DNA of 64,000 nt from Saccostrea echinata (taxonomy: Eukaryota): assembly GCF_033153115.1 (NCBI RefSeq), contig NW_026889757.1, forward strand, positions 5,580,001-5,644,000. The letters are read 5' to 3'. A program made the translations under genes and the position numbers. Below the pieces are notes generated by a model. The model was not told where the DNA came from, searched no databases, and saw only the letters and a program-made list of their open reading frames with translations. Shown one piece after another: positions 14,084 through 45,119 of this stretch (the stretch's first letter is position 1; each line of letters opens with the position of its first letter).

Positions 14084-17000
14084 ATGGTATGCATATATAG
14101 TTAAATGTAATAAGATTTTAACGATTATGAGTTTGTCCTTAATTTGATAATACTATATTGTCCTAAACGGACAAATTTAAATATTTGATATTAAATAATT
14201 ATTATGAAATTGTATTGCAGATCATTGCCGAAGAAGAAATATCTTTGGAAATCCACACACTCGTCCTTATTAAGGATCAAACGTATCAGCCTTATAAACT
14301 GAGCTTTGACACAGTTACACAGATCAACATATCTGAATCATTCCCATTAGTAAGAATTTAACAGAATTTCTATAATTGTAGACTTGATATTCTCCCACTT
14401 TGTTCAAACAAAACGTTAATTAAGTTTTCTGTCAGTTTCTTTCTTTCTAAATGTATGTTCTTTTTTGTCTTTCTTTTCTTTGTTTTTAGCGTATTGGCAA
14501 TTTTGAATTTTTTATTTCTTTGCTTATTTTTAGCTCACCTGAGCATTAATCCGTCGTCTGTAGGTATGTCGTGCTTGTCGTCTTAAAACTGCCTCATTTT
14601 CATCTTCTCCAAAACCACTGGGTCAGCTTCAATGAAACTTGGCACAAAGTATCCCTGAGTAAAGGGCATTAAAGTTTGTTCAAATAGGTACCAGTGTGTC
14701 CCTTTCCAGGTTCATACTTCATGTAAGAAGTCACGAAAATCAAAAGAAATGGGTTGGTGTTTGGTGTTTGCTCAAGATAGAGCTTCTGGTAAAGTCAGCA
14801 GCATTGAGAGGCATTTGTCTAAGACATAGCTTCTGGTAAAGTCAGCAGCATTGAGCGACATTTGTCCAACACAGAGCTTCTGATGAAGTCAGCGGCATTG
14901 AGCGGCATTTGTCCAACACAGAGCTTCTGGGTCAGCGGCATTGAGCGGCATTTGTCCAAGACAGAGCTTCTGGTAAAGTCAGCGGCATTGAGCGGCATTT
15001 GTCCAAGACAGAGCTTCTGGTAAAGTCAGCGGCATTGAGCGGCAATCGTCCAACACAGGGTTTCTGGTGAAATCAGCGGCATTGAGCGGCATTTGTCCAA
15101 GACAGAGCTTCTGGTGAAGTCAGCGGCATTGAGCAGCATTTGTCCAAGACAGTGCCTCTGGTAAAGACAGCGGCATTGAGCGGCATTTGTCCAACACAGA
15201 GCTTCTGGTAACTTCAGCGGCATTGAGCGGCATTTGTCCAACACAGATCTTCTGGTAACTTCAGCGGCATTTGTCCAACACACAGCGTCTAGTTAAGTCC
15301 AACACGGTACTTCTGCTAAAGTAGTTGCAAAGTTTAAATAACTTATATGAAAAGTTGAACTTTTTTCAAAAAAATGCTTTTATTCACTTTTGTACAATGA
15401 AAATTCTTTTGCCTTAAAAAGATTCACAGAAGGCCTGAAAAATTAATGTGTGCAACTGCATAAATAATGTTTTGTTTAGACCAAGGATAGAAGAATCTGA
15501 AATACAATTAATTCTTTTTCTACTGATAGAATTACTTATAATTAAGATAAGGTTTATCATTCTATCTATGAAAGGTACTGTAAAGATATTTGTTTTTCTT
15601 TAATGGCAAGGATTTGATCATTAATTAGCATTTATGTTTCCCCCTTTTCTTTTGATAATATTTTCATTAGTATCTAGATAATACCATAATATTAGACTAA
15701 ACTGACTTCACTAAATAGCATAATTCTGGCCTGTTATTAGTCAAGAAGCATGCTAATTAAGCATTAAAGTAATGGCAGTCAGATACATACTTATCACCAG
15801 TGTGTGATTCTGTCCCAAAATCTTAGCAAGTGTTTAAAACCCAAAGATGATTAGGCACATACTGTTAATCATCTGGCTTCAATATTCTAATTTTGTAAGA
15901 AATGTAATCATTGATATTGCTTGATTATCACTATTAACTTAAGGGCATCCCATGCATAAGTAGCAAAAATATATCTTTGATCTTTAATTTTAAAATTAAG
16001 GAAAATATGTAAAGAGTCCATAAATTGAGGTACATTAGAAAAAGCTTTACCATGAGATTTGTTTCAAAATTATCACAAAATAGATGTCTAATTAGAGTCT
16101 AAGGACTAATTAATGTCCCCCATTCAATATAAGTTAAACCACAAGAAAGAATGCCCCTTCCATATAAGGTCACTACATGAAGAATACCACTCAGTTTGTA
16201 TTAAGTCACTTCATAAACAATGCAGCTTATTCCGTATAAGGTCATTACATGAAGAAAGCTGCTTATTCCGTATAAAATTACTTCATGAAGAATGCCACTT
16301 ATTCCGTAAAAGTTCACTACATGAAGAATGCTGCTTATTCTGTATAAGGTCATTACATGAAGAATACTGCTTATTCCGTATAAGGTCACGACAGGAAGAA
16401 TTCTGCTTATTTTGTATAAGGTCACTACATGGAGAATGCTGCCTATTCCATATAGGGTCACTACAAGAAGAATGCTGCTTATTCCGTAAAAGGTCACTAC
16501 ATGAAGAATGCCGCTCTTTCCATATAAGGTCACTACATGAAGAATGCCGCTTATTCCGTTAAAGGTAACTACATGAAGAATGCCACTTATTCCGTAAAAG
16601 GTCACTACATGAAGAGTGCCGCTTATTCCGTTAAAGGTCACTACATGAAGAATGCCACTTATTCCGTAAAAGGTCACTACATGAAGAATGCTGCTTATTC
16701 TGTATAAGGTCATTACATGAAGAATACTGCTTATTCCGTATAAGGTCACGACAGGAAGAATTCTGCTTATTTTGTATAAGGTCACTACATGGAGAATGCT
16801 GCCTATTCCATATAGGGTCACTACAAGAAGAATGCTGCTTATTCCAAATAAGGTCACTACATGAAGAATGCCGCTCTTTCCATATAAGGTCACTACATGA
16901 AGAATGCCGCTTATTCCGTTAAAGGTCACTACATGAAGAATGCCACTTATTCCGTAAAAGGTCACTACATGAAGAATGCCGCTTATTCCGTTAAAGGTCA

Positions 17001-20000
17001 CTACATGAAGAATGTCACTTATTCCGTAAAAGGTCACTACATGAAGAATGCCGCTTATTCCGTTAAAGGTCACTACATGAAGAATGTCACTTATTCCGTA
17101 AAAGGTCACTACATGAAGAATGCCGCTTATTCCGTTAAAGGTCACTACATGAAGAATGTCACTTATTCCGTAAAAGGTCACTACATGAAGAATGCTGATT
17201 ATTCCGTATAAGGTCACTACATGAGGAACACTGCTTATTCTGTATAAGGTCACGACGTGAAGAATGCTGCTTATTCCGTTTAAGGTCACTACATGAAGAA
17301 TGCTGTTTATTCCATATAAGGTCACTACATGAAGAATGCTGTTTATTCCATATAAGGTCACTACATGAAGAATGCTGTTTATTCCGTATTAGGTCATTAC
17401 ATGAAGAATGCTGCTTATTCCATATCAGGTCACTACATGAAGAATGCTGTTTATTCCGTATTAGGTCATTACATGAAGAATGCTGCTTATTCCATATAAG
17501 GTCACTACCTGAAGAATGCTGCTTATTCCATATAAGGTCACTACCTGAAGAATGCTGCTTATTCCATATAAGGTCACTACATGAAGAATGCTGTTTATTC
17601 CGTATAAGGTCATTACATGAGGAATGCTGCTTATTCCATATCAGGTCACTACATGAAGAATGCTGTTTATTCCGTATAAGGTCATTACATGAAGAATGCT
17701 GCTTATTCCATATAAGGTCACTACCTGAAGAATGCTGCCTATTTCGTATAAGGTCACTACATGAGGAACACTGCTTATTCCGTATATGCTAATTACATGA
17801 AAAACTTGCTCATTCTGTTTATGGTCACTACATGAAGAATGCTGCTTATTCAGTATAAGATCACTACATGAAAAATGTTGCATTCCCGTATATGCTTATT
17901 AGATGAAGAATGCTGCTAGTTCTGTGTTGGACTTTACCAGAGGCACTGTGTTAGTCAAATGCTGCTCAATGCCGCTGACTTTATCAGAAGCACTGTGTTG
18001 GACAAATGTCGCTCAATGCCGCTGAAGTTACCAGAAGCTCTGTGTTGGACAAATGCCGCCCAATGCCGCTGACTTTACCAGAGGCACTGTGTTGGACAAA
18101 TGCCGCTCAATGCCGCTGACTTCACCAGAAGCTCTGTGTTGGACAAATGCCGCTGACTTCATCAGAAACTCTGTCTTGGAGAAATGCCGCTCAATGCCGC
18201 TGAAGTTACCAGAAGCTCTGTGTTGGACAAATGCCTCTCAATGCCGCTGTCTTTACCAGAGGCACTGTCTTGAACAAATGCCGCTCAATGCCGCTGACTT
18301 CACCAGAAGCTCTGTGTTGGATAAATGCCGCTGACTTCACCAGAAACTCTGTCTTGGACAAATGCCGCTCAATGCCGCTGAAGTTACCAGAAGCTCTGTC
18401 TTGGACAAATGCCGCCCAATGCCGCTGACTTCACCAGAGGCACTGTGTTGGACAAATGCCGCTCAATGCCGCTGACTTCACCAGAGGCACTGTGTTGGAC
18501 AAATGCCGCTCAATGCCGCTGACCTCACCAGAAACTCTGTGTTGGACAAATGCCGCTCAATGCAGCTGACTTTACCAGAAGCTCTGTCTTGGACAAATGC
18601 CTCTCAATGCCGCTGACTTCACCAGAAACTCTGTCTTGGACAAATGCCGCTCAATGCCGCTGAAGTTACCAGAAGCTCTGTCTTGGACAAATGCCGCTCA
18701 ATGCCGCTGAAGTTACCAGAGGCACTGTCTTGGACAAATGCCGCTCAATGCCGCTGACTTCACCAGAAACTCTGTGTTGGACAAATGCCGCTCAATGCCG
18801 CTGACTTTACCAGAGGCACAGTGTTGGACAAATGCCGCTCAATGCCGCTGACTTTACCAGAAGCTCTGTTTTGGACAAATACCGCTAAATGCCGCTGACT
18901 TTATCAAAAGCACTGTGTTGGACAAATACCATGTTTTGACTCTCAGAAAAGTTTTTAAAAACATCTTACCCAAGATATTTCTTAGTACTCGTAGTATTCT
19001 ATAAACTAAAAGTAATCTTTCGTGACTTCTTACATGAAGGAATAGCCCCCTTTCCAAGGGGAGAAAATCAAGAAAAGACAAAAACAGGTTGAGGTCATTA
19101 AAAAGATTTTTCCAGACAGCCACTGGGTCATAGAAATAAACTAATGTGAAAACTTCCTGATTAGTGTCAGTTCAGGTTGCTTCAGATCGGGTTACTGAAG
19201 TAGGCTGGGTCACGTTAAAGGATTACAAAATAACGTAGGGGTGCATAGGGCGAACACTAGTGCAAATTCAAATTTGTTCAAACCATAGCCCCGATGGGTA
19301 GGGTTGGGCCACAATAGGTAATTTAAGTTCTAAATGGAATACAAAGGAAAAATCTTTAAAAATCATTTCAAGAATAACAGGGTCGTGATTAAGCAAATCC
19401 TCAGGTAGTGTAGAATCAAACGTGTTCAAATCATTATCATGGCCCCCATGGGAAATGTGGTGCCACAAATGGGGGAGGGGCAAATTTAAGATGGAACCAC
19501 ATGTATGTAGAAAAAATGGTAAAAACCTTTACAGTAACTACACAATTTAAATCACATTATTATGCAATAATATGCCTCAGAAAATGCCGGTTTAAATTCA
19601 TTCAGACCATCTTCAAATGGTTTAGGCGATGCCAAGTAAAGGGTCAAATACTGGAATACGGTGTAAAGGAAAAAAAAATCTTTTAAAAATCCTTTTCTAA
19701 AAACTGCAGTACAACAATAATCATATTAGTTGTATGGAAGCATCCCAATCTAGTGCAGATTTTTATTTGTTCAAATCATGCCTTCTGGTATGAGGTGGGG
19801 ATGAAATAGGTTAAACAGTATTCAAAATTTCGATGAGAATATGTAGAAAATTTAAAAGCAAAACAGGGACAAACAGAGATCATATTGATATCTAGGGTGG
19901 AACCAAAATTTGGGAAATTTCACGGGAATATCAAGGGGATTAAAAAAAATAATAATAATCTTCTGAAGAAGTAGGGCCAAGATGACTCGGGTGAGCGTTG

Positions 20001-23000
20001 TGTCCCTTTGACCTTCGTTGGTCTTTAGATGGTAAAACATATCTGTGAGGTAATAGAAGTGCCTTGCCCCACCCTCGGTCACTTAGTTTCTTTCTTTAGG
20101 TTAAGATGCATCAACACCAGTTTGAATACCCCACTGTCATTCAGTTCTATCAATTTCTTTTCTAGGATAGATTGGATAAAATGGACCCCGGTTACAGGGA
20201 TAGCCCGAGCCTGGGCGTGATTGAGGTAACTTTTATCTATTAGTCGACTTTATGATTTGATTTTACTCGCTGTCCATCTTATATATATTTAGCATCACTC
20301 AGTAATGTGGGTGTGTACAAAGGCAGAATTACAGTAATTCGTCTTTTCTTCCTGTGTCAATACTTTTTGCGACTTTGCTTGTTTTTGCAACGATTAGTCT
20401 GTGTATCTTAACAATTATCATTACAGAAATCTAGAAATGGATTGGGGGGGGGGGGGTTAAACGAATATTCAAACTGGCGGATAATTTTTTGGTTTGCAGT
20501 GTTCGGCGTTTAAGAAGCTTTGAATGTACATCGTATTATGTAATAAAAATTGGACAAAGATGCAAAAGGAAATGTTTAACCTGCCCCTTTTCGTGTCAGA
20601 AAAGGAGAGGTGTCTACTTGTTAACAAATACAGAGTACATGTTGTTTCAGTTAAAGATCACTCTTGTTGGTCAATTAAGCTGAGGTTTACAGATATGCCT
20701 TTCCCATTAGAATAATTTCAGATCATAATAAATAAAATAAGAAATAAAATAAGAAAAAGATATGATTTACATGAATTTGTTGAATTAAAAAAAATCAATT
20801 TGACGTTCGTTCATATACAAATGTGCCTCTTTTATACAATATACATGTATATATATTACTGAGCTATAATTTGTACGACAGGAAGAAGATGTTGACGTTG
20901 AACAAGAAAACGAATCTACTCACATCTTATCGAGAAGGGAACTGGTAGGTGTCTAGATCACATTTGTAAGAAGGCATATGTATAAAATAATATATTTTGA
21001 CATTTTAGTGCTTTATATAAATTTCCATCCTTGACCTTGTATTAAGATATATTTTGACATTTTATGCTGCATTTAGAAGAAATCTTTTGTTGTTGTTGGT
21101 GGTGGTGGTGTTGTTGAATAATTTTGTGTTCCTTTAATATTTGACCTCTCTCTGCTCCTAGACGACCGCTAGCTCCACTATGCTCATGATGAACCTTGTT
21201 AAAGATGTACAACTAGAAAGCAGTTACGAGAGATTTAGACCGGTTAGATCTTTTCTGTCCAATTAGTAAATGAATAATTTTACAATAACGATTTAGCTAG
21301 ACTTAATTAAGTATAAAATAAGTGTAAAAACTCGATTGGCAATAAGAGAGATGGTAATAAAAAGAAGTATCGAAAGTTTGAACCCGGAATATCAGTAACT
21401 TTCACATTCGATATCTACTATATGCCACTTGAATATTTATTTAAATTAATATTATACAATTATTGCTGGTTTTTGAGGTCAATACGATGATTTAGACACC
21501 TGAGGAGTACAATATTCACCGAGCCCGAAGGGCGAGGTGAATATTGTACTTCGAAGGTGGCTAAATCATCGTATTGACCGAAAAAACAGCAATAATTGTT
21601 TTATTATATGATTCAATGATTAAATGACACACACTCATTAAGCAATCCGTGCCATCTTACTTGTTCACATCTACTGAAGTACTAGCCGAATATCAGAGAA
21701 ACGGAGTTAAAAAACCAGTTGTATTATTTTGAAAATTTTAATTCTAGTTTAGGTGCAATGTAGAAAAATAAATGTCAGGCAATATATAGGATTAATTTTG
21801 AAAAAGGGGGCATTAAAAAGGGAAAAAAATGACAACGTACCTGAAAACAAATCTTTGACTAGCCCCCCTCCCTAAAAAAGGAAAAGAATTCTCCCAAATC
21901 AAAATTTTATTTGGTGGGATGTAAAGGTACATAAACCTTTCGAGGGGAGGGGGGCTTACAATGAAATTTTTTATCCTTAAAATTTAAATTAAAACTTAAC
22001 ATTCTCAAAAGGTGGGGAGAGGGGCAGGACTCCTGCACCCCCCCCCCCTCCCCGACCCCTCACCCAAGAATCTATGTGCCTTAATGTTATGTTCATATGA
22101 GTGGATGTCATATGCAAGTGAAATAACTTTCCAAAACTATTTGCATCAATTTGGAATTTCCCTATCTATTTCTAGTCCAATGTAGAATAAATAATTCCTT
22201 ATATTGACCTGGAAGATCACGTGCAGGTCAATATAATGTAGTATTTTTCTAACATTGTTGGATCTCAGCCAATCAGAGAGATGGGAATTATTCAATCATA
22301 TAATAATCTTTTATGTTTACACTAGTCGTCAACTGCGGTTGTTTTGCCTACTATTTCCGAGGAGTTGGAGGTACTGGAAAAGGTAATCACGCTTGCGCAC
22401 TAATAACCAATGGAAACCGTGCATTTTTCTGTGTGTGTAGCAAAAATAGTAAAGGTCATTTTCAAAATAAATTGTCGGAATTTCTTTGTATAATTTGAGT
22501 ATTCTTTTTTATACAAAATATATATCATATCAATGAACAAATATGATGTTTTATCCTTTAGACCGGGCAGACCTCACCAATTTCCACCAAAACTGTCAAT
22601 TCTAAGGAGAGCATTGAGATGGAGGTAATGCTTTTTGAAAATTTTCACTAAAACTATTCATACACATTATATATGTGTTTTATTGGATTTCTGTGTAAAC
22701 CACAACCCTGTTTCAGTTAATGATATTTTTTCACTTAGGCTAGGAGACTGTCTATTACGGCTATACACAGTGCCTTTTCTGCCGCTGTAATGGTATCAGA
22801 GGGAGGTTGCCGAGCACGTGTAAAGGTAAGAAAACATGAACAAACATATTTGTATAAAAGTTCATTAAAAAAGTTATGAATTTTGGCGGATGACACCACT
22901 TTTTTCTTGCGGAGGAACTTATTTAATTTGACGTCTTCAAATGTTTACGAGGGTCGTTCAATAAATAATGCAATAGGTCATCTAAAAGTAAGAAAAGTAA

Positions 23001-24405
23001 GTAATACATATTCTAAATATTTTCAATCCCTCAAAGCATTCCCTGTTATCCTTTACATATGTCTTAAGTTTTTGTACCCATGACCAGAAAACCTCAGCAT
23101 ACCCATCTTTCGGGATGCCCAAAAGACACTGATGAATATCACTTTCCATGACATGTCTAATATTGTACAATCTTCCTTTGATTGTTTTCATGCATTTTTA
23201 GAATGAATCTCACAATGGCTGAGATCTAGCGAATATGGGGGATGGCAAAGCTCTGTTAAATTTCTTTTCTTCAGAATTTCATTTATTTCTCCGTGCTTAT
23301 TTGCAGCAGCTTGCCAGGTGCAAGAAAATTACCCTGGGTGTGGCATTTGGACTTCCTTTGCAAGAAATCTGTTTATCTTTCCTCAGTGCAATTTGAACAT
23401 AAAAGTTACCATTGATGGTCCTTCTTTTGGGTGTATCTACATGTTTTACTGGACCTCTTGAAAAAATGAAAACTAATAAAACATGCTTGGAGCCCTTGTT
23501 TCTCTTTACTGTAATAAGAACAATAGCTTTTTCTTTGATTCCACATTTTATTATTGATCTTACTTTTTGGCTATAAAAAGTGCACCCATGTTTCGTCATC
23601 CATCACACAATTTTAACAAATCTTCTATTTTGTTAAGATATTTGTTTTTAAGTAAACCGTTGGCACAATTAATGCGTATGTATCTCTTAGACAAGTTTAA
23701 GAAAATAAGGCACATATCTGATAGAAATATTATTATATTCATTTCCGTTGTCAGAGTTCTATAAAATGTCATGACGATGAAATGCTTAGTTTTTAGCAAT
23801 GTCTTTGGATGTAAATCTGACATTTTCAGATATCATATTGCACATTGCATCAATAATTTTTGGTGTCCCTACAAATTTCCATCGACCAGTTTGACTGTTA
23901 TATTTTAACTCTCCTTTTTTCTTTTGAATTTCTTAATCAATCTGAAAACTATACAGCGACTATTCTTTCCGCATAAAAAAATCATATCTTTAATATGAAT
24001 TCTTCGGCGATTTATGTAAAGAAGCACACTTTTCACATACGCTCTCATTTTCATCTTCTTGGCAGAGATCATTTTTAAACAGTTTTCAGCTCAGTGTAGT
24101 AACCATGCATACTTTAAAAGTGAATTTCTTTGCAAGGAAATAGGAAAAATCATGGAGTTTTCTGTGATTAGGAGCTCTTTAATTGAACGTTTCAACAGTG
24201 AAAAAATAAAATTGAATAGATCGACATTTACTATGATATACTGTTTGTTGCATTATCTATTGAACGACCCTCGTACTCCTTGGATAGTAATATGACCTTT
24301 ATTGTACGAACACTCCATTTTCAGCCCAAGCGTAACATCATCGGAAGCCTGGTGTCCTGCTTCCGTGCCTGCTTTGGATGCGCAAGAAATACAGATAGAG
24401 ATTAA
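14084..24405 (+). CDS. Uncharacterised multi-exon gene (~195 aa) with AKAP-like helix and Cys-rich C-terminus
   Basis: AG/GT-bounded exons, all multiples of 3 and open in phase 0: 14221-14349, 20029-20049, 20166-20225, 20882-20944, 21162-21242, 22562-22624, 22739-22825; terminal exon 24325-24405 ends in TAA. Possible ATG at the end of small exon 14065-14086 (start uncertain). Confidence 0.7.
14221..14349 (+). CDS. Exon of uncharacterised gene
   Basis: attgcag|IIAEEEISLEIHTLVLIKDQTYQPYKLSFDTVTQINISESFPL|gtaaga, 129 nt. Confidence 0.6.
14770..15320 (-). repeat. 47-bp tandem array, inverted relative to 17920-18930
   Basis: Unit gtcagcggcattgagcggcatttgtccaagacagagcttctggtaaa, about 11 copies. 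Confidence 0.95.
16110..17915 (+). repeat. 36-bp tandem array
   Basis: Unit aaggtcactacatgaagaatgctgcttattccgtat, about 50 copies. Confidence 0.95.
17920..18930 (+). repeat. 47-bp tandem array with 37-bp variants
   Basis: Unit ggacaaatgccgctcaatgccgctgactttaccagaagctctgtgtt, about 21 copies. Confidence 0.95.
20166..20225 (+). CDS. Exon of uncharacterised gene
   Basis: ttttctag|DRLDKMDPGYRDSPSLGVIE|gtaact, 60 nt; preceded by 21-nt exon 20029-20049 (MVKHICE). Confidence 0.6.
20882..20944 (+). CDS. Exon of uncharacterised gene
   Basis: cag|EEDVDVEQENESTHILSRREL|gtaggt, 63 nt. Confidence 0.65.
21162..21242 (+). CDS. Exon of uncharacterised gene
   Basis: ctctctctgctcctag|TTASSTMLMMNLVKDVQLESSYERFRP|gttaga, 81 nt. 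Confidence 0.65.
21456..22307. mobile_element. Hairpin-bearing non-autonomous element (possibly Crypton-type)
   Basis: Near-perfect 144-bp palindrome 21456-21599 centred on gcccgaagggc; second inverted pair ttattatatgatt (21601) and aatcatataataa (~22295-22307). Confidence 0.55.
22562..22624 (+). CDS. Exon of uncharacterised gene
   Basis: tcctttag|TGQTSPISTKTVNSKESIEME|gtaatg, 63 nt. Confidence 0.7.
22739..22825 (+). CDS. Exon of uncharacterised gene (amphipathic helix)
   Basis: ttttcacttag|ARRLSITAIHSAFSAAVMVSEGGCRARVK|gtaaga, 87 nt. Confidence 0.72.
22948..24273 (-). mobile_element. Full-length degenerate mariner transposon (transposase pseudogene)
   Basis: 26-bp TIRs CGAGGGTCGTTCAATARATAATGCAA, TA on both sides, 1326 bp. 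Minus-strand remnants DDETWVHF and HPPYSLDLSHC (YSPDLAP motif) with many stops and frameshifts. Confidence 0.9.
24325..24405 (+). CDS. Terminal exon of uncharacterised gene
   Basis: ccattttcag|PKRNIIGSLVSCFRACFGCARNTDRD-TAA. Confidence 0.68.
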   Translation, partial: PKRNIIGSLVSCFRACFGCARNTDRD

Positions 24406-25184
24406 TTTTAAGTTTGAGTATTTTTTTCAAGAACAGCTCAGTTTTGGGGGGTTAAATTTTTTTTTAAAGAAAACACTTTTATATTTTAAAAAAAAAATCA
24501 TTGATTGATATAGGAGACAATTTCAGTATTCGTGTAGCTTTATTATTATTATTTTTTTTTTACGCACGTGTTGTTTATATAGGGGTAAACGGAATTTCTA
24601 ATAACACTCCAATTTTTTGAATGGGTTAAGAAAATATATTTGTATTGTTTGAAAACATAATTATTTTCTCTACCCTCCATTCCTGATAATTTTTTGAAGT
24701 AATGATTCCAAAAATTTGACTCCGAAGAAATGAAAATGAAATGTTAATGTTTAAATTTTTCCAATGAAATTTATCACAAATTTACAAAATACTTGGAAAT
24801 GCATACAGGGCGGCTGAGATGGTTACATAAGATTGATTAGAATGATTATAATGATATTAGTAATTATACGATTTTTTTTTCAAATTATCTCTTATAGGGA
24901 GTCTTCGTGTAAAGACTGTTTTTGCATTATATCTAATTGCATGAAAGATATTTAGTAATGTCAGGAGAATTGCGTAACCCAGATAGCAAATATTTTAAGA
25001 TAAAGTCCCGTTTCTCTAAGTAGCTATTATAAATGAGGAGCGTTCGAAACTCTTCACATAGAATGTTTAATGGCTATTCCTACAAATAAGGCATCTCGCA
25101 AGCAGAGATCCTGATATAAATAAAACATTTTCTCGAGTTAAATAGGTTAGGAAAACGGTGAGGTAGAAACTGTTCCAATGATAG

Positions 25185-26335
25185 CGCAGACCAAGATGAG
25201 TATACAATTGAGATGCACTGTAGCTACGCTAGGAAAAGTGGCAAAGCTTTTATTAGTAATACAAACAAGCCAAGATTTGCAAGACTGGTGCTGAAAGAAT
25301 GAACGATTTTTTGTCATTCTGGGTTTAGGAAATACCTATGTTAAAGACAGAGATATTACTTTCCATAAGTTTTCCAAGAAATGTAGTATGGAGTCATTTA
25401 TCTGGGTTTTTTTTAAATATATATAGTTTGAGATAAAGCCCTGTTTCATAAAGCAGGAATTTTGAGATTAAAAAAACCTTTCTTGAAATAAAAGGTTGCC
25501 AAAAGGAGAGAGTTAAAAAAAACTCTTCCTGTGGTTGTGTTGGTCAAGATTAGGATCGAGGCACACTGTTGCTACGGCAGGAAAAGTAGCAACAAGACTG
25601 AGGCGCACTGTAGCTTCGCTAGGAAAAAACAATAGGATTAAGGAGCATTGCAGCTACTCTAGGAAAAATAGCAACAGGAATGAGGCGCACTGTAGCTAAG
25701 CTAGGAAAAATAGCAACAAAATCGAGGCGCGCATTGTAGCTACGCTAGGAAAAGTAGCAAAGCTTTCATTAGTAATACAAGCAAGACAAGATTTGCAAGA
25801 TTGGTGCACATGCTGTCAGAATGAATGATTTTTTTTGTCAATTTGGGTTTGAGAAATACCTATGTTAAAGATAGTGCTATCATTTTTCATAGGTTCCCCC
25901 CCCCCCCAAAAAAAATGTAGTATGGGGTCTCTTACCTGTCTTGTTTAAAAAGATATTTTTGAGATGAAGCTCTGTTTCTAAAAGCAGAGAATTTGAGATT
26001 TAAAAAACACCTTTCTCAATATACAGGGTTGTAAAAAAAAAAAGGAGAGAGTTGTAAACTCTTCTTTCTCTGGTTGCGCTGGCCAAGATGAGGATCTAGG
26101 CGCACTGTAGCTATGCTAGAAAAAATAGCAATAGGATTGAGGCGCACTGTAGCTACGCTAGGAAAAATAGCATTAGGATTGAGGCGCACTGAGGAAAAAT
26201 AACAAGGCTTTTATCAATAATACAAGCAAGCCAAGATTTGCAAAATTGGTCAATGATGCTAGAATGAACGATTTGAAAAAAAAAATTCGTTTGGTGAATA
26301 GCTTTGTTGAAGATAGTGCTATTATCTCCTAGAAA
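25185..26335 (+). repeat. Higher-order repeat: three modules, each headed by 1-5 copies of a 42-bp unit
   Basis: Unit aggattgaggcgcactgtagctacgctaggaaaaatagcaat, followed each time by ...aatacaagcaagccaagatttgcaa... Confidence 0.85.
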
Positions 26336-36060: not shown

Positions 36061-37184
36061 TCATTTATTTCGCTTACACCATGTCACTGGTACATGAGGT
36101 GCAATAATAAAAACAAGTAAAAATGATGCAAAGCATCAAATTGGCTGCAAAACAAATTTAGCATTTTAAAAAGTACTTTCACAAGTAAGCATTCAAGGAA
36201 AGCGCAAGTCATTTAAAGCTGAAAGAGAGAACATTTTTTTAGACTGTCTTCCATAAAAAGCAAAAATTGCAAGATAAATAGGAATGAAATTTCAGTGCAT
36301 TTTTTCATTAAGTTGATTCATCGATAATCAGTGATAAATGATAAGAATGTATTGTCATCAAGAAAGTGAACCACGCGCTGATACCCTGGATCTTTGTCAC
36401 GTGATCTGATGCCGATGGTTTCTGCAGACTATGCTTAACGGCGCGGAGATGGACAACACGATGCACTGTGTGGAAGAAAAATCATCCTTGTGTTATTCGA
36501 GCTGTAGCATATTCAAAACAATTTTTACTAGTTTTACCAACTTTTCAATTTTTATTCATCACTTTTTATCCGGAAAATCATAACGATTTATGAGGAGTAC
36601 CTATTGTAAACCCTTTTTATATAATCATAAATTAATAATGAGAAATCAAATTGAATTCAAAACATAATAACAACAATTAAGATTTAGTTCAAAAGAAGTT
36701 TTAAAAATATTTTGCTCAATTTTTATGCATGTTATGATAATATCATTAACGAATTATTTTACTTTACTGTTAAAGAAATAGCGTCTCATTTCCCCATGTG
36801 CACTTTCTAACACAACCACAAATAGACCGACCGCTCCAGCGGCCGATAATAAGTCGTCATGATTAATCGTGAAAATACAAGGGTATGCTACAACAACACA
36901 AGAGAGAGTGTACTACAAACTACAGCAACAAACAAGAAAAAGATACGGAAGGCCTTAAATGCCTTGTGTGAAAAATATTCATGGTTGCAATGACATTTCT
37001 TCATTATATGCTGATACTTCTTCATTATACGATTATACATGTGTGTCGAGATGAAACTTTGACATCATATGCTGATACTCACTCATTACTACTCATTATA
37101 TGTATCTGATGAAACATCTTTATGTAATGATACTTTCGTGTTGTCTTTCTTCTTTACATGAAGACTGCCATTTCGTGCTGCTAC

Positions 37185-39062
37185 TTCTTCATAATATGCC
37201 GATACTCCTTCATTATATGCTGAAACTCCTTCATTATATACTGATACTCCTTCATTATATGCTGATACTCCTTCATTATATGCTGATACTCCTTCATTAT
37301 TTGCTGATACTCCTTTCTTATATGCTGATACTCCTTCATTATATACTGATACTCCTTCACTATATGCTGATACTCCTTCACTATATGCTGACACTCCTTC
37401 ATTATATGCTGATACTCCTTCATTATATGCTGATACTACTTCATTATATGCTGATACTCCTTCTTTATATGCTGATACTCATTCTTTTATTATATGCTGA
37501 TACTACCTTATTATATGCTGATACTCCTTCATTATATGCTGATACTCCTTCATTATATGCTGATACTCCTCTTTTATTATATGCTGATACTCCTTCACTA
37601 TATGCTGATACTATCTTATTATATGCTGATACTCCTCCATTATATGCTGATACTCCTCTTTTATTATATGCTGATACTCCTTCATTATATGCTGATACTA
37701 CCTTATTATATGCTGATACTCCTTCATTATATGCTGATACTCCTCTTTTATTATATGCTGATACTCCTTCACTATATGCTGATACTACCCTATTATATGC
37801 TGATACTCCTTCACTATATGCTGATACTACTTCATTATATGCTGATACTCCTTCATTATATGCTGATACTACCTTATTATATGCTGATACTCCTTCACTA
37901 TATGCTGATACTACCTTATTATATGCTGATACTCCTTCACTATATGCTGATACTCCTTCATTATATGCTGATACTCCTTCATTATATACTGATACTCCTT
38001 CACTATATGCTGATACTACCTTATTATATGCTGATACTCCTTCACTATACGCTGATACTCCTTCATTATATGCTGATACTACCTTATTATATGCTGATAC
38101 TCCTTCATTATATGCTGATACTCCTTCATTATATGCTGATACTCCTTCATTATATACTGATACTCCTTCACTATATGCTGATACTACCTTATTATATGCT
38201 GATACTCCTTCATTATATGCTGATACTCCTTCATTATATGCTGATACTCCTTCATTATATACTGATACTCCTTCACTATATGCTGATACTACCTTATTAT
38301 ATGCTGATACTACTTCACTATATGCTGATACTCCTTCATTATATGCTGATACTCCTTCATTATATGCTGATACTCCTCCATTATATGCTGATACTCCTTC
38401 ATTATATGCTGATACTCCTTCACTATATGCTGATACTCCTTCTTTATATGCTGATACTACTTCACTATATGCTGATACTCCTTCATTATATGCTGATACT
38501 CCTTCATTATATGCTGATACTCCTTCATTATATGCTGATACTCCTTCTTTATATGCTGATACTCCTTCATTATATGCTGATACTCCTTCATTATATGCTG
38601 ATACTCCTTCATTATATGCTGATACTCCTCCATTATATGATAATACTCCTTCATTATATGCTGATACTCCTTCTTTATATGCTGATAGTCCTTCACTATA
38701 TGCTGATACTCCTTCATTATATGCTGATACTCCTTCATTATATGCTGATACTCCTTCATTATATGCTGATACTCCTTCATTATATGCTGATACTCCTTCA
38801 CTATATACTGATACTCCTTCATTATATGCTGATACTCCTTCATTATATGCTGATACTCCTTCATTATATACTGATACTCCTTCACTATATGCTGATACTC
38901 CTTCATTATATGCTGATACTCCTTCATTATATGCTGATACTCCTCCATTATATGCTGATACTCCTTCATTATATGCTGATACTCCTTCATTATATGATAA
39001 TACTCCTTCATTATATACTGATACTCCTCCATTATATGATATTACTCCTTCACTATATGATA
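37185..39062 (+). repeat. 21-bp minisatellite, about 90 copies
   Basis: Unit tatatgctgatactccttcat; generates the spurious long ORFs (YADTPSL, MLILLHY, GVSAYNE). Confidence 0.97.
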
Positions 39063-41724: not shown

Positions 41725-44700
41725 TTGAACATATTTTATTGACATAAACAAATGGATCGGAAACAAGTTCTTACAACTTACTGGTTCCTCTCCTTAAATA
41801 TAACAATTGTCATGCAAAGAAAAAAAAATTGCATAGAAATATTAATTTAACAAGTAACATGATTGAAAGTTCTGTTCAATAACATAGCAATTTAAAATCT
41901 ACAGGTTTCATCAATAAATTTATGGACAGCAGCAAATATTGTGTGATTAGTTTGTAGAGGCAAATCTGTGTCACCCCAAAGTAACAAATTTGTGTCAATA
42001 TTGACCAACTCGTCAAGCAAAAACAGGCGGTTAAAAAGCTTATTTCTAGCATTTGGATAATTTCTACATGCAAAAAAGAAATGATAAACATCTTCGTATT
42101 TACCACATGAACAAAAAGGATTATCGATAATATTTCGTTTATAAAGATCATAATTAAGTAAACAGTTGTGTCTTAGTTTGGTATGAATTATGTTTGTATA
42201 GCGTTTACCAAAAGAAAAATATGTTGGCGGATTGCTGACTTTTGTAATAGACCATAAGTTTTTACGGGATGAATTAATTGAGATGGCTTCTCTCGCTTCT
42301 ACTTTTAATAAATTCCACTGCTTCACAGCATCTGGTACAAAGGACCTTTTGTATACTTCTAATCTACATCGTGGGACAATAAACTGTTCTTTATTACGGG
42401 TATTATATTTTGATACATTTTCATGCGTGTTGGGGACAATATTACTCAAATACATAGGAACATCCCCTTTATGAATTTTGAACATAGTAGTCATTTTTGC
42501 AATATAGCGCCTGGATTTTAAAGTTTCCCACCCAGTTTCTAAATAAAGTGTTTCTGAAGATACAAAAATAGGAAGCCCTGTGACAATTCTAGCGGCAGCT
42601 AGTTGCACTTTTTCAAGCTTATCAGCATCGTGTTTAAAGCAGCCATCCCAAACAATAGAAGCGTATTCAAGCGTAGGTCTAATGAAGGTAGTGTACAATT
42701 TTGAAAGGTTACTTCTACTCAGTTTGTACTTAAGTTTTTTCAAAAGCCCAAGTTTCTTATAAGCATTGTTTACAATACCGTCAATATATGTAGACCAGCT
42801 GAGGTTTTGTGACAAAAGTAGACCTAAGTGTCGATGGACTGGAACACATTCCAGTCTGTCACCTTTAAAAAATAATTGAGGCGTAACAGAAGTAGTTTTC
42901 GTGTTGAAAAAAAATAACCTTAGTTTTAGATGGGTTAAATTTTAGAAGCCACTTATTTGACCATAATTCCAAAATATGTAAATCGTGGTTTAACTTATAT
43001 TCAATGTCTAAAATATTGTATGAGGATTGTTGAAGCGAATTGTCAACCGCAAATAATCTACACATTGACAACATATTTTCAGCCACATCGTTTACATAAA
43101 TCAGAAATAAAAGTGGCCCCAAGACAGAGCCCTGGGGTACACCTGCAAATATATCAAGTTTTGACGATAACAAATCCTTATACATAACTCTTTGTGACCT
43201 ATGACTTAAATAACTAGAGAACCACTGAAGGAGATCACCAAATATACCATAAGTTTGTAATTTAAAAATAAGACCTTTGTGCCACACCCTGTCAAAAGCT
43301 TTTGAAAGATCACAAAAAACCATACAACATGATTTACCTTCATCAATGTTTTGTACAATGTTATGATAGGTTTCTAGTAATTGGTACACAGTAGAATGAC
43401 CGGGTAGAAAACCGGCTTGATATCGATAAAACAGATTATTGCTATGGAAATAATTGTACACATGTTTAAAAATAATTCTTTCCATAATTTTACTAACACA
43501 AGATAATAGTGACACAGGTCTATAATTAGACACCAAAGAGGGATCATCCTTTTTAAAAAGAGGAATAACATGAGCTAATTTCCATAAAGATGGAAATGTT
43601 CTTTCTAATAAAGACCTATTAAACAACATAGTAAGTGGTTTGACAACAGAATGGCATGTAGATTTTAACATCTTATGGCTAACACAGTCAGGACCTATAG
43701 CTTTGTTCACTGGGAGTATTGAAATAATGTCTACTACTTCCTGTTCTTCAATTGTAATTTTACAAAATTTGTCACTACACAGACTATACATGTTTGGCAG
43801 TGTTTCATTTGAATCATCAATAGCTGAAATAGATGAAAAATAAGAATTTAAAGCTTCAGTCTTGTCAAAATCAGAATAAGCCAGCTTTTTTACACCGTTA
43901 TCATTATGTATTTGTATTGGTGGTAATTCGTTAGAGAGTTTAACGTTAAATGAATCCTTCATCAACTTCCAGTAGAGTTTGTTATTATTTTTACTTGAAT
44001 CATTTAAGTATGTTTCTATATTATCGTAATAATTCGCCATCGCATGTTTTTTCATATTGTTAACCGAGTTTCGTACCTTTCTATATGCGGACCAGTCAGA
44101 ATCTTTTTTTGTTTTAAGTGCTTTATTACGAAGACGGTTTCTGATTCTTATTGTTTTTCGTAATACTGAATCAAACCATGGTTTGTCACGAGGACGAATG
44201 GTTACTGTTTGTTCCGGTACACATTCACGAACACTGGTAAGAAATTCAGATGTGAAATTTTCTGTAGCCAGATCTATAGTATCAGCTTCATTGATGATTT
44301 TATTCCAGTTACAATTCTCAATTAAATAGTTTAGTTTTTCAAAGTCCGCATTTTTATAAACCCACACTTTTCTTTTATAAGAACGATTATAATTTATATT
44401 TGAAGAAAGCGAGATATAAGTAGCTCTATGATCACTTATGGACGACTCCATTATTAACGTGCCCGATTCGGTAACTTGAATATCAACAGAAGTGAGAATG
44501 GGGTCAAGAAGCGTGCTCGACGTGTTCGTAGTTCTTGTTGGTTCATGGATATTGTTAACTAAATTGTGTGTTGTGATCATTTCACGGATGATATGTGTTT
44601 GTGGAGCATTAAAGAAATCAACATTAATATCACCGACTAATACTATCTTATTCGAATGTTCACCTACTTTATCAATACACCATGAAAGTTTGGTCCAGAA

Positions 44701-45119
44701 ACTGCTCTCGGAGTTCGAAGGACGATATACACAGCATAAAAAATATTTACAGGTATGGTTATCTATTTCGATCCATATGCATTCAACGTCAGCTGGTTCA
44801 AATTCCTGGCGCCTAACAGCCCGTATTTTATTAGATAAGTAGATCATAACACCACCCCCAAAACAGTTTCTATCTTTTCGCAAAATATTACAAAACCCAT
44901 CGAAGTGTAAATCATCATTGTGTACGGTATGGTCAAGATGGGTTTCAGTAAAACATAGTATGTCGAAATCATGAACAAACGAGTTTAAATGACCTATTTT
45001 GTGTCTAATACTTCGGATATTGAGGTGTAAAATGTCAAGGACATTTTCAATATTAGGCCCCGGATTGACCTCGATATCGCCACATGCCAGTAGAACAAAC
45101 GTAAATAATTGTAAATAAA
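41725..45119 (-). mobile_element. 5'-truncated CR1-group LINE (APE endonuclease plus reverse transcriptase)
   Basis: HLNIRS, TETHL, GDINVD and SDH endonuclease motifs; YRPVSLLS, DLSKAFD, GVPQGSVLGPLLF RT motifs; 14-bp TSD AACGCTCATGTGTT (41711-41724, 45120-45133); 3' end aataaaatatgttcaa. Confidence 0.95.
41892..45117 (-). pseudogene. LINE ORF2 with one frameshift and a catalytic mutation
   Basis: ORFs 42865-44883 and 41892-42815 join if one base is removed from the A8 run at 42907-42914; the catalytic FADD motif reads FAVD at 43053-43042. Confidence 0.88.

What the first reader, a model, noticed from the sequence alone, without database searches (positions are those of the whole stretch)
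14084..24405. Hidden all-phase-0 gene encoding a candidate membrane-anchored AKAP-like protein
Seen: eight short exons (129, 21, 60, 63, 81, 63, 87, 81 nt), each bounded by AG and GT or a stop, each a multiple of 3 and open in phase 0, threaded between transposons. The ORF track essentially misses the gene. The C-terminal part reads ...SKESIEMEARRLSITAIHSAFSAAVMVSEGGCRARVKPKRNIIGSLVSCFRACFGCARNTDRD*. Established: PKA-anchoring helices follow A-x-x-L-(V/S)-x-x-(A/I)-(I/L)-x-x-A, and small membrane AKAP has YAHRLSQDILCDA (from recall). Inference: EARRLSITAIHSA fits this pattern and contains a PKA site (RRxS), and the basic, hydrophobic CxxxCxxC tail could be palmitoylated. This could be an undescribed lineage-specific, self-regulating PKA anchor.
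Basis: partly seen in the sequence, partly recalled or inferred. Interest (0 to 1): 0.85.

Follow-up and report, generated by a model that had tools for sequence, protein, structure and literature searches.

The report
Small oyster gene, AKAP role unproven
The hidden gene is real and transcribed in a rock oyster, and it encodes a 158-residue divergent member of a small uncharacterised protein family found so far only in Saccostrea, but nothing beyond a loose motif match supports the idea that it anchors protein kinase A.

Summary
Gene: real.

Corrections to the model:
- The 21-nt exon (20029-20049) has no support.
- A 57-nt exon (22326-22382) was missed.
- The 129-nt exon lies at 14221-14349, not 14084. 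It is probably 5'UTR.
- The likely start is the ATG at 20181, giving 158 aa in seven phase-0 coding exons.

Family: the genome is Saccostrea echinata. The helix exon has at least four, probably five, paralogues there. Each is followed by a Cys-rich terminal exon. The annotated products are about 150 aa, named "uncharacterized protein LOC...", and were found only in S. echinata and S. cucullata. The window gene is the most divergent copy. It keeps the Ser/Ala-rich helix (R-[LM]-S...IHSAFSAA) and the basic, Cys-rich tail.

AKAP reading: not supported, and not excluded.
- The motif fits by residue type, but chance gives it in 7-11% of shuffles.
- Three of eight paralogues break it.
- The F/Y-A determinant of type I AKAPs is absent.
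- The helix is only weakly amphipathic.
- Pfam and PDB searches give nothing.
- The complex prediction gave no verdict.

The likeliest role is a lipid-anchored small adaptor. The spliced protein was never joined or searched whole.

The parts
14221..14349 (+). 129-nt exon, probably 5'UTR. It follows an AG acceptor, so at least one further upstream exon exists and was not found.
   Evidence: The X2 loose end before 20166 equals the last 30 nt of this exon, and contig lengths in X1, X4 and X5 fit it. There is no ATG in any frame. The frame is open, but shuffles give that in 3% of cases. The DNA is unique in the genome.
20166..20225 (+). 60-nt exon. The likely start codon is at 20181 (context AAAATGG), the first ATG of the known leader.
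   Evidence: Junction 20225|20882 in 4 runs. ATG analysis. The product starts M-D, as all family members do. This is an inference.
20882..20944 (+). 63-nt coding exon, acidic.
   Evidence: Junctions 20225|20882 and 20944|21162 in 4 runs.
21162..21242 (+). 81-nt coding exon. It is the same size as the family's most conserved exon and keeps the T-x-A-S-x-M-x-M-M motif.
   Evidence: Junctions. Comparison. The similarity is weak on its own.
22326..22382 (+).
   Evidence: Junctions 21242|22326 and 22382|22562, GT..AG, in 4 runs. Open in phase 0.
22562..22624 (+). 63-nt coding exon, at the position of the family's first helix exon but without the helix (it contains Gly and Pro).
   Evidence: Junctions. 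Ranked 5th of 3372 six-frame pieces against the family profile, at the colinear profile positions 83-102.
22739..22825 (+). 87-nt coding exon holding the RRLS site, the Ser/Ala-rich helix and a basic linker. It is the only part significantly similar to the paralogues.
   Evidence: Junctions. Paralogue matches. Profile E = 1.1e-5, rank 1. No differences from the window in the X1 contig.
24325..24405 (+). Terminal coding exon with a basic, hydrophobic tail carrying Cys-x3-Cys-x2-Cys, then the TAA stop. In sample S1 an allele reads the stop as CAA and ends two codons later.
   Evidence: Junction 22825|24325 in 4 runs. Other letters at 24403 and 24406 in X1 and X4. Rank 2 in the profile scan, colinear.
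24406..25500 (+). 3'UTR, at least 1.1 kb. Contigs run on beyond 25500.
   Evidence: Continuous contigs from 24323 to 25500 in 4 runs (table 8).
20029..20049 (+). It is not part of the observed transcripts.
   Evidence: X2 joins 14349 to 20166 directly. Depth over it is 0 in X1, X2 and X5.
21448..22307 (.). Intronic repeat of about 860 bp, with many copies at 90-97% identity.
22946..24275 (.). Intronic repeat of about 1.33 kb, with many copies at 85-90% identity.
14773..18927 (.). Intronic satellite block: a 36-bp array flanked by two 47-bp arrays in opposite orientation.

Best explanation
This is a real, expressed gene of the rock oyster Saccostrea echinata. It has at least one 5'UTR exon and seven coding exons, all in phase 0, spread over about 11 kb between transposons and satellites. 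It most likely encodes a 158-residue protein starting at 20181.

The gene is the most divergent copy of a small family of about six loci in this genome. The other products are about 150 aa and are annotated only as uncharacterised LOC proteins in S. echinata and S. cucullata. These share a disordered acidic N-terminal half, one long helix, a short polybasic linker and a hydrophobic tail with 2-3 cysteines.

What the window copy still shares with the family shows what matters: the Ser/Ala-rich helix with an invariant serine, and the tail.

My best reading is inferred, not shown. The protein is a peripheral membrane adaptor. The basic, hydrophobic tail holds it at a membrane, probably with S-acylated cysteines. 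The small-residue helix is a close-packing contact surface, either for a partner or for itself. The invariant serine, which usually sits behind basic residues, is a phosphorylation switch. A PKA regulatory subunit is only one of several possible partners.
For: Gene and splicing.

Start codon: first ATG, strong context, no upstream ATG in the 144-nt leader, and M-D as in the family.

Species: contig lengths 53466550 and 36248625 equal those recorded for the S. echinata proteins P0004 and P0007.

Family:
- Paralogous helix exons, each with a Cys-rich terminal exon about 130 nt downstream.
- Eight database proteins, all from Saccostrea.
- About six loci in the genome.
- Matching exon sizes: 81, 57 vs 54, 63, 87 vs 90.
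- In a blind profile scan of the window, exons 7, 8 and 6 rank 1, 2 and 5 of 3372 pieces, in colinear order.

Architecture: in the AlphaFold2 model of P0002, residues 1-60 are disordered and 72-123 form one helix at pLDDT about 95. Exon net charges run from -6 in the N-terminal part to +4 and +3 in the last two exons. The tail region has the highest hydrophobic moment in the paralogues, 0.5-0.65.

Conservation: S5 and S-A-F-S-A-A are invariant across the window gene and 11 family sequences. Within the family the tail is 0.77 identical and the helix core 0.76, against 0.44 for the N-terminus.
Against: - No experiment and no recognised domain back the mechanism.
- S-acylation and membrane binding are inferred from composition only.
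- The window copy has lost the family's first helix exon motif, and its stop codon is polymorphic, so it could be drifting.
- The most conserved family element is the Met-rich and acidic 81-nt exon (identity 0.82). My model does not explain it, and it is largely lost in the window gene.
- The 5' end is unresolved. An upstream in-frame ATG would lengthen the protein, because the 129-nt exon is open in frame.
Confidence: 0.5

Rival explanations
1. The helix in exon 7 docks into the docking/dimerisation domain of a PKA regulatory subunit. The palmitoylated tail places the kinase at a membrane. PKA phosphorylation of the RRLS serine inside the helix releases the kinase. This would be a lineage-specific, self-regulating AKAP.
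For: - Positions 2, 5, 6, 9, 10, 13, 14 and 17 of the helix are A, L, S, A, I, A, F and A. That is the small or hydrophobic pattern described for AKAP helices (PMC12083921; sequence).
- The RII-type motif (recalled from memory) matches exon 7 and 5 of 8 paralogues.
- The helix and tail are the parts kept between the window gene and its paralogues.
- The serine is invariant.
- The genome encodes both RI and RII docking domains.
- The paralogues carry a second helix, A-R-[QR]-L-S...A-L, that resembles my recollection of the smAKAP helix.
Against: - The motif arises by chance in 7-11% of shuffles and at 0.15 per 100 aa in random open frames. It fails in P0003, P0004 and P0005.
- The F/Y-A determinant of type I AKAPs is absent. 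Mutating it in smAKAP abolishes RI binding.
- The hydrophobic moment is about 0.2 for the window helix, and about 0.1 (mean-subtracted) for the paralogues' 52-residue helix. Isoleucine, valine and methionine also sit on the 'polar' face.
- Both faces of the helix are invariant, whereas AKAP orthologues conserve mainly one face.
- The basic residues before the serine vary: KQ, SR and KR all occur.
- There is no sequence relation to any AKAP in Pfam or PDB.
- smAKAP is reported to be restricted to vertebrates.
Confidence: 0.12
2. The Ser/Ala-rich hydrophobic helix is itself membrane-embedded or packs against a membrane protein through small-xxx-small contacts. The family would then act as small regulatory subunits of a transporter or channel, switched by phosphorylation next to the membrane. 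This works like phospholamban or FXYD-type micropeptides, without being related to them.
For: - The 16-17 residue stretch is moderately hydrophobic (mean Eisenberg H 0.4-0.47), weakly amphipathic, and flanked by charges.
- A-x3-A-x3-A and S-x2-S spacing is invariant.
- A basic and cysteine-rich segment follows directly.
Against: - The stretch is too short for a normal transmembrane span and contains His and several Ser.
- AlphaFold2 draws it as the end of a long soluble helix.
- There is no hydrophobic tail anchor.
Confidence: 0.13
3. The window copy is a transcribed, decaying or functionless paralogue of a young, fast-evolving orphan family. The retained frame and motifs reflect history, not present function.
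For: - It is the most divergent copy. Only exon 7 is significantly similar.
- The first helix motif is lost.
- The stop codon is polymorphic.
- At least one other locus (C54) shows frame disruptions.
- The family was seen only in one genus.
Against: - All seven coding exons keep frame, splice sites and exon sizes despite deep divergence.
- The X1 contig shows 0 differences in exon 7 and at most 1 in the coding part of exon 8, against 5 at the stop and the first 100 nt of the 3'UTR.
- The gene is expressed in three samples from two studies.
Confidence: 0.15

Closest known systems
Saccostrea 'uncharacterized protein' family (S. echinata LOC133179286, LOC133196300, LOC133196792; S. cucullata LOC134253599 and others; P0002-P0009)
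   Same: Phase-0 exon plan with matching exon sizes. M-D start. The T-x-A-S-x-M-x-M-M motif. The helix R-[LM]-S...I-H-S-A-F-S-A-A. A basic linker. A terminal exon N-I-x-x-x-x-x-S-C-x3-C-x-G.
   Different: The window gene is far more divergent: about 50% identity in the best exon and little elsewhere. It lacks the family's first helix (A-R-Q-L-S...A-L-A-E-E-F) and the long acidic run. Its tail is longer and ends in an acidic N-T-D-R-D. It is spread over about 11 kb instead of about 1.5 kb.
smAKAP (C2orf88), the small membrane-anchored type I AKAP of vertebrates
   Same: A small protein with a lipid anchor. It has an A-x-R-L-S start to a helix with small or hydrophobic residues at the AKAP positions, and a serine inside the helix. 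The smAKAP sequence is from my recollection. The YA61 position is confirmed in PMC12083921.
   Different: No detectable homology. smAKAP is anchored at its N-terminus, and this protein has no Gly2. The essential Y-A pair is E-A here. smAKAP is reported as vertebrate-only. R-subunit binding is untested here.
AKAP7/AKAP18 alpha (lipid-anchored type II AKAP; helix recalled from memory)
   Same: R-L-S followed by paired hydrophobic positions in the same register. A short protein with acyl anchoring.
   Different: No sequence relation was found. The polar face here is Ser/His/Ala rather than charged. The anchor is C-terminal. The comparison rests on memory and was not tested.
Proteins held at membranes by a polybasic stretch plus palmitoylated C-terminal cysteines (general class, from textbook knowledge)
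   Same: A basic cluster directly followed by a hydrophobic segment with 2-3 cysteines at the extreme C-terminus.
   Different: No CaaX box. Acylation is untested. There is no homology to any named member.

Membership tests
AKAP (functional class) | A 14-18 residue helix with small or hydrophobic side chains at positions 2, 5, 6, 9, 10, 13, 14 and 17 (PMC12083921). | tested here: met
   Window exon 7 gives A, L, S, A, I, A, F, A at these positions. A looser recalled motif matches by chance in 7-11% of shuffles, so the fit carries little weight.
AKAP (functional class) | The helix is amphipathic: a polar opposite face that is less conserved than the hydrophobic face. | tested here: not met
   The hydrophobic moment is 0.18-0.28 for the 18-mers that cover the core helix (0.37 only where the window runs into the basic linker), and 0.12-0.24 in the paralogues. 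Ile, Val and Met lie on the other face. H, S, S and A of that face are invariant.
AKAP (functional class) | Direct binding to the docking/dimerisation domain of a PKA R subunit. | not testable with these tools
   The single complex job gave no verdict. It counts neither for nor against.
Type I (RI-selective) AKAPs, including smAKAP | F or Y at helix position 1 and Ala at position 2 (97.7% conserved; the YA-to-LL mutant loses RI binding). | tested here: not met
   Glu-Ala in the window gene, and Glu-Ile or Glu-Thr in the paralogues.
smAKAP (C2orf88) orthologue | Sequence homology, and an N-terminal Met-Gly-Cys acylation motif. | tested here: not met
   No Pfam or PDB hit for exons or family proteins. 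The N-terminus is M-D-P/Q.
Saccostrea ~150-aa uncharacterised family | The helix motif R-[LM]-S-x3-I-H-S-A-F-S-A-A in a phase-0 exon of 87-90 nt. | tested here: met
   Profile E = 1.1e-5.
Saccostrea ~150-aa uncharacterised family | A Cys-rich basic terminal exon directly after the helix exon, and colinear exon sizes. | tested here: met
   Tail exons. Exon 8 ranks 2nd and exon 6 ranks 5th in the blind scan, at colinear profile positions. Each alone is not significant (E = 2.3 and 8.1).
Saccostrea ~150-aa uncharacterised family | A Met-rich plus long acidic 81-nt exon (the most conserved family element). | tested here: inconclusive
   Same exon size and the T-x-A-S-x-M-x-M-M start, but the acidic run is gone. 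tblastn E = 11.
SNARE-like or coiled-coil helix with lipid anchor (considered) | Heptad a/d hydrophobic periodicity over about 53 residues. | tested here: not met
   No register stands out, and there is no peak near 103 degrees. No Pfam SNARE hit.

The most novel reading that the evidence does not exclude
The Saccostrea family, including this gene, is an invertebrate-born class of C-terminally S-acylated mini-AKAPs. Their anchoring helix carries its own PKA site, so the anchored kinase can switch off its own tether. The paralogues would offer two such helices in tandem and the window gene one.
Probability: 0.1. Interest if true: 0.6.

Novelty: new member of a known kind. Interest (0 to 1): 0.3.

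Why it matters
The result adds a correctly spliced model for a short, intron-rich gene of the kind that annotation easily misses. It shows that the gene belongs to a genus-restricted family of small proteins with a lipid-anchor-like tail and a conserved phosphorylatable helix.

If the family anchored PKA, it would be an independent invention of a membrane mini-AKAP outside vertebrates. A recent survey places the burst of selective AKAPs in vertebrates (PMC12083921).

As things stand, it is an orphan family with a testable but unproven biochemical guess. Its value is mainly for oyster genome annotation.

Tried and rejected
- The search of protein representatives with the 129-nt exon gave only a spurious repeat protein (P0001, 27% identity). 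That fits the exon being UTR.
- The search for homologous proteins with the open frame around exon 8 was blank. That search sees only proteins of 34-107 aa, so the blank says little.
- Pfam and PDB sequence searches with single exons and with the family alignment gave nothing above noise.
- ESM Atlas look-alikes of P0004 gave only unnamed clusters below the useful score.
- Complex prediction with two copies of the oyster RI docking domain (L016:1441-1605) and window exon 7 scored 0.07 and 0.25, below the mark of 0.34. The tool's verdict is 'no answer', which is no evidence either way. The partner chain was window:22739-22831, exon 7 plus two intron-coded residues, to reach 30 residues. RII was not tried because the cap is one job.
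- A SNARE-like or coiled-coil reading of the long helix was rejected for lack of heptad periodicity.
- The spliced protein of the window gene was not joined, searched, folded or looked up as a whole. All searches were exon by exon, by reference or with database proteins. I therefore cannot say whether this gene is already annotated in NCBI.
- One literature search for the recalled RII motif found nothing relevant, so that motif stays 'from memory'.


Full report
**What is in the sequence.**

Each follows a pyrimidine-rich tract and AG. The first two are followed by GTAA.

The other exons can be placed from the stated lengths: 14221-14349 (129 nt), 20166-20225 (60), 20882-20944 (63) and 21162-21242 (81). 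The stated start, 14084, is wrong. 14084-14212 has several in-frame stops. The 129-nt exon begins at 14221 behind an acceptor, so it is an internal exon.

Short AG..GT-bounded open segments are frequent here.

**RNA evidence.**

One search found runs holding about a fifth of the words of 19900-25400. Contigs from four of them (three samples, two studies) were laid on 19700-25500. All four show the same six GT..AG junctions:
- 20225|20882
- 20944|21162
- 21242|22326
- 22382|22562
- 22624|22739
- 22825|24325

Intron bins have zero depth, for example 20282-20863 and 21252-21445. The runs are therefore RNA, although their record does not say so. The assembly holds no second copy of exons 7 or 8 that could be a retrocopy.

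This changes the model in two ways.
- The X2 contig runs from 20166 straight into the last 30 nt of the 129-nt exon, so the 21-nt exon 20029-20049 is not used. Contigs drop rare forms, so rare use cannot be excluded.

Contigs continue unbroken from 24323 past 25500, so the 3'UTR is at least 1.1 kb. Two contigs end 7 nt upstream of 14221, so the 5' end is unresolved. Read laying was capped at one call.

**Repeats.**

The exons lie in unique DNA between repeats. A roughly 860-bp element lies at 21448-22307 and a roughly 1.33-kb element at 22946-24275, each with dozens of copies. Intron 1 holds a satellite block at 14773-18927. The 129-nt exon is unique in the genome.

**A gene family.**

A search of the window's own genome with exon 7 found four weak hits. 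Read in frame, they are clear paralogues of the whole exon: T-R-R-M-S-L-I-A-I-H-S-A-F-S-A-A.... After fetching 20 kb around each, I found three shared features:
- Each paralogous exon is followed about 130 nt downstream by a terminal exon of the type P-N-I-F-R-R-F-F-S-C-C-x-S-C-x-G-R-R.
- Each is preceded by a 63-nt exon, A-R-[QR]-L-S-E-x-S-x-K-x-A-L-A-E-x-F.
- Further upstream lies an 81-nt Met-rich and acidic exon.

Using the open frame around one paralogous exon as query gave a 150-aa database protein from Saccostrea cucullata. Using that protein as query gave eight proteins of 128-155 aa, all named 'uncharacterized protein LOC...'. All came from S. cucullata or S. echinata.

Two of these sit on contigs of 53466550 and 36248625 bases. 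Those are exactly the lengths of contigs C1 and C30 of the window's genome. The genome is therefore S. echinata.

A profile of the eight proteins finds about six loci in the genome, on C1, C30 (three to four) and C54. The window gene is the weakest match.

A blind scan with that profile over all 3372 open six-frame pieces of the window gave these ranks:
- Exon 7 ranks first (E = 1.1e-5).
- Exon 8 ranks second.
- Exon 6 ranks fifth.
- Each lies at the colinear profile position.

Exon sizes also match: 81, 57 vs 54, 63, 87 vs 90 nt, all in phase 0. The window gene is thus a divergent member of this family.

**Start codon.**

The family proteins begin M-D and have two short N-terminal coding exons. 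In the window transcript, the first ATG in any frame of the known 189-nt leader is at 20181, in the context AAAATGG. It is followed by Asp. The product is then 15+21+27+19+21+29+26 = 158 aa, close to the family's 150.

The 129-nt exon is open in the same frame. Shuffles give that in 3% of cases. It found no relative among 1.84 billion representative proteins. I read it as 5'UTR, while an N-terminal extension from an unseen exon remains possible.

**What the protein looks like.**

AlphaFold2 on the family alignment gives a disordered first 60 residues. It gives one helix over residues 72-123 at pLDDT about 95, and a low-confidence helix in the tail.

The window protein is acidic in its first five coding exons and basic in the last two. 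Its exon 6 contains Gly and Pro and has lost the family's first helix motif. Its helix is therefore roughly the last residues of exon 6 plus the first 20 of exon 7.

Across the window gene and 11 family sequences, the serine of RRLS/RRMS and the run S-A-F-S-A-A are invariant. R, [LM], I and H are nearly so.

Mean pairwise identities within the family are as follows:

| Part | Identity |
|---|---|
| 81-nt exon | 0.82 |
| Tail | 0.77 |
| Helix core | 0.76 |
| First helix | 0.70 |
| N-terminus | 0.44 |

They are among the conserved parts within the family. They are the only parts the window gene clearly retains.

**Testing the AKAP idea.**

A 2025 survey describes AKAP helices as 14-18 residues with conserved hydrophobic positions 2, 5, 6, 9, 10, 13, 14 and 17 and a less conserved polar face. 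It reports an almost invariant F/Y-A at positions 1-2 in type I AKAPs such as smAKAP. The smAKAP Y61A62-to-LL mutant loses RI binding, and smAKAP arose in vertebrates (PMC12083921).

Points for the AKAP idea:
- In the window helix the eight positions read A, L, S, A, I, A, F, A, which fits.

Points against:
- Position 1 is Glu, and the paralogues have Glu-Ile or Glu-Thr.
- The hydrophobic moment is only about 0.2.
- Bulky hydrophobic residues also sit on the other face.
- The 'polar' face (H, S, S, A) is as invariant as the hydrophobic one.
- The RII-type motif that I recall from the literature matches exon 7 and five of eight family members, but fails in three. It turns up in 7-11% of shuffled sequences.
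- The basic residues before the serine are not fixed: KQMS and SRMS occur.
- No Pfam family or PDB chain is related.

The genome does encode RI and RII docking domains. One complex prediction, with RI docking domain x2 and exon 7, ended below the mark. The tool says it must not be used either way.

The AKAP reading is therefore a possibility at about one in eight, not a finding.

**Best reading.**

Three things are shown:
- an expressed gene whose frame and splice sites are kept despite deep divergence;
- membership in a Saccostrea-restricted family;
- a conserved small-residue helix and a conserved basic, Cys-containing tail.

Three things are inferred:
- the tail holds the protein at a membrane, through polybasic and hydrophobic residues and probably S-acylation;
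- the helix is a tight-packing contact surface;
- the invariant serine is a phosphorylation switch.

The rivals are an AKAP, a membrane-embedded micropeptide-like regulator, and a drifting paralogue.

**Limits.**

I therefore cannot say whether NCBI already annotates this very gene.
- No eukaryotic genome search beyond the window's own assembly was available. The protein search needs shared 5-residue words, so 'Saccostrea only' is a lower bound on the family's range.
- The run ids are coded. RNA-seq of S. echinata ganglia and gonads and an older whole-animal set exist (PMC12564202). They may be the studies seen here, but I cannot confirm that.

Noticed in passing
window 24403-24411: In the contigs of runs X1 and X4 (one sample), the TAA stop reads CAA and the next codon TTT reads ATT. 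That allele ends two residues later, at the TAA at 24409-24411. X2 and X5 keep the stop.
   Followed up: partly
window 14773-18927: Intron 1 holds a 36-bp satellite (about 49 copies, 16158-17917). It is flanked by two arrays of a 47-bp unit that are reverse complements of each other (14773-15271 and 17930-18927). The mechanical ORF list shows a 386-aa frame running through the satellite.
   Followed up: no
window 37176-39059: A 21-bp tandem repeat with about 89 copies at 90% match creates open frames of 543-656 aa. It is probably a minisatellite, not a gene.
   Followed up: no
window 41892-44883, minus strand: A 671-aa open frame with a reverse-transcriptase domain (RVT_1, E = 1e-28), followed by a 306-aa frame with no Pfam match. 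This is a retrotransposon copy.
   Followed up: partly
G000:C9:5462539-5462646 (L018, minus strand): A PKA RII-like regulatory subunit lies in an uninterrupted 386-aa frame. It starts with the docking domain, then the RRQS inhibitor site and the start of the cyclic-nucleotide-binding domains. A second RII-like docking exon lies on C15 and an RI docking exon on C53. The C9 copy may be an intron-poor duplicate or a retrogene.
   Followed up: no
G000:C54:18735253-18736200 (L008/L012): The family copy on C54 needs frame changes in the first-helix exon and in the tail exon. It may be a pseudogene or carry assembly errors.
   Followed up: partly
L007:9552-9620 and L009:8986-9012: In paralogues A and B, the 54-nt exon region also reads, in another frame, as a Cys-rich end (C-F-R-R-C-P-A-C-A-C-C...stop). 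The database proteins use the other frame, so this is probably a coincidence of composition.
   Followed up: partly
window 25190-26191: Copies of a 42-bp or 82-bp repeat unit lie inside or just after the 3'UTR. The RNA contigs show 'goes back' joints there, so the transcript's 3' end cannot be placed from contigs.
   Followed up: no
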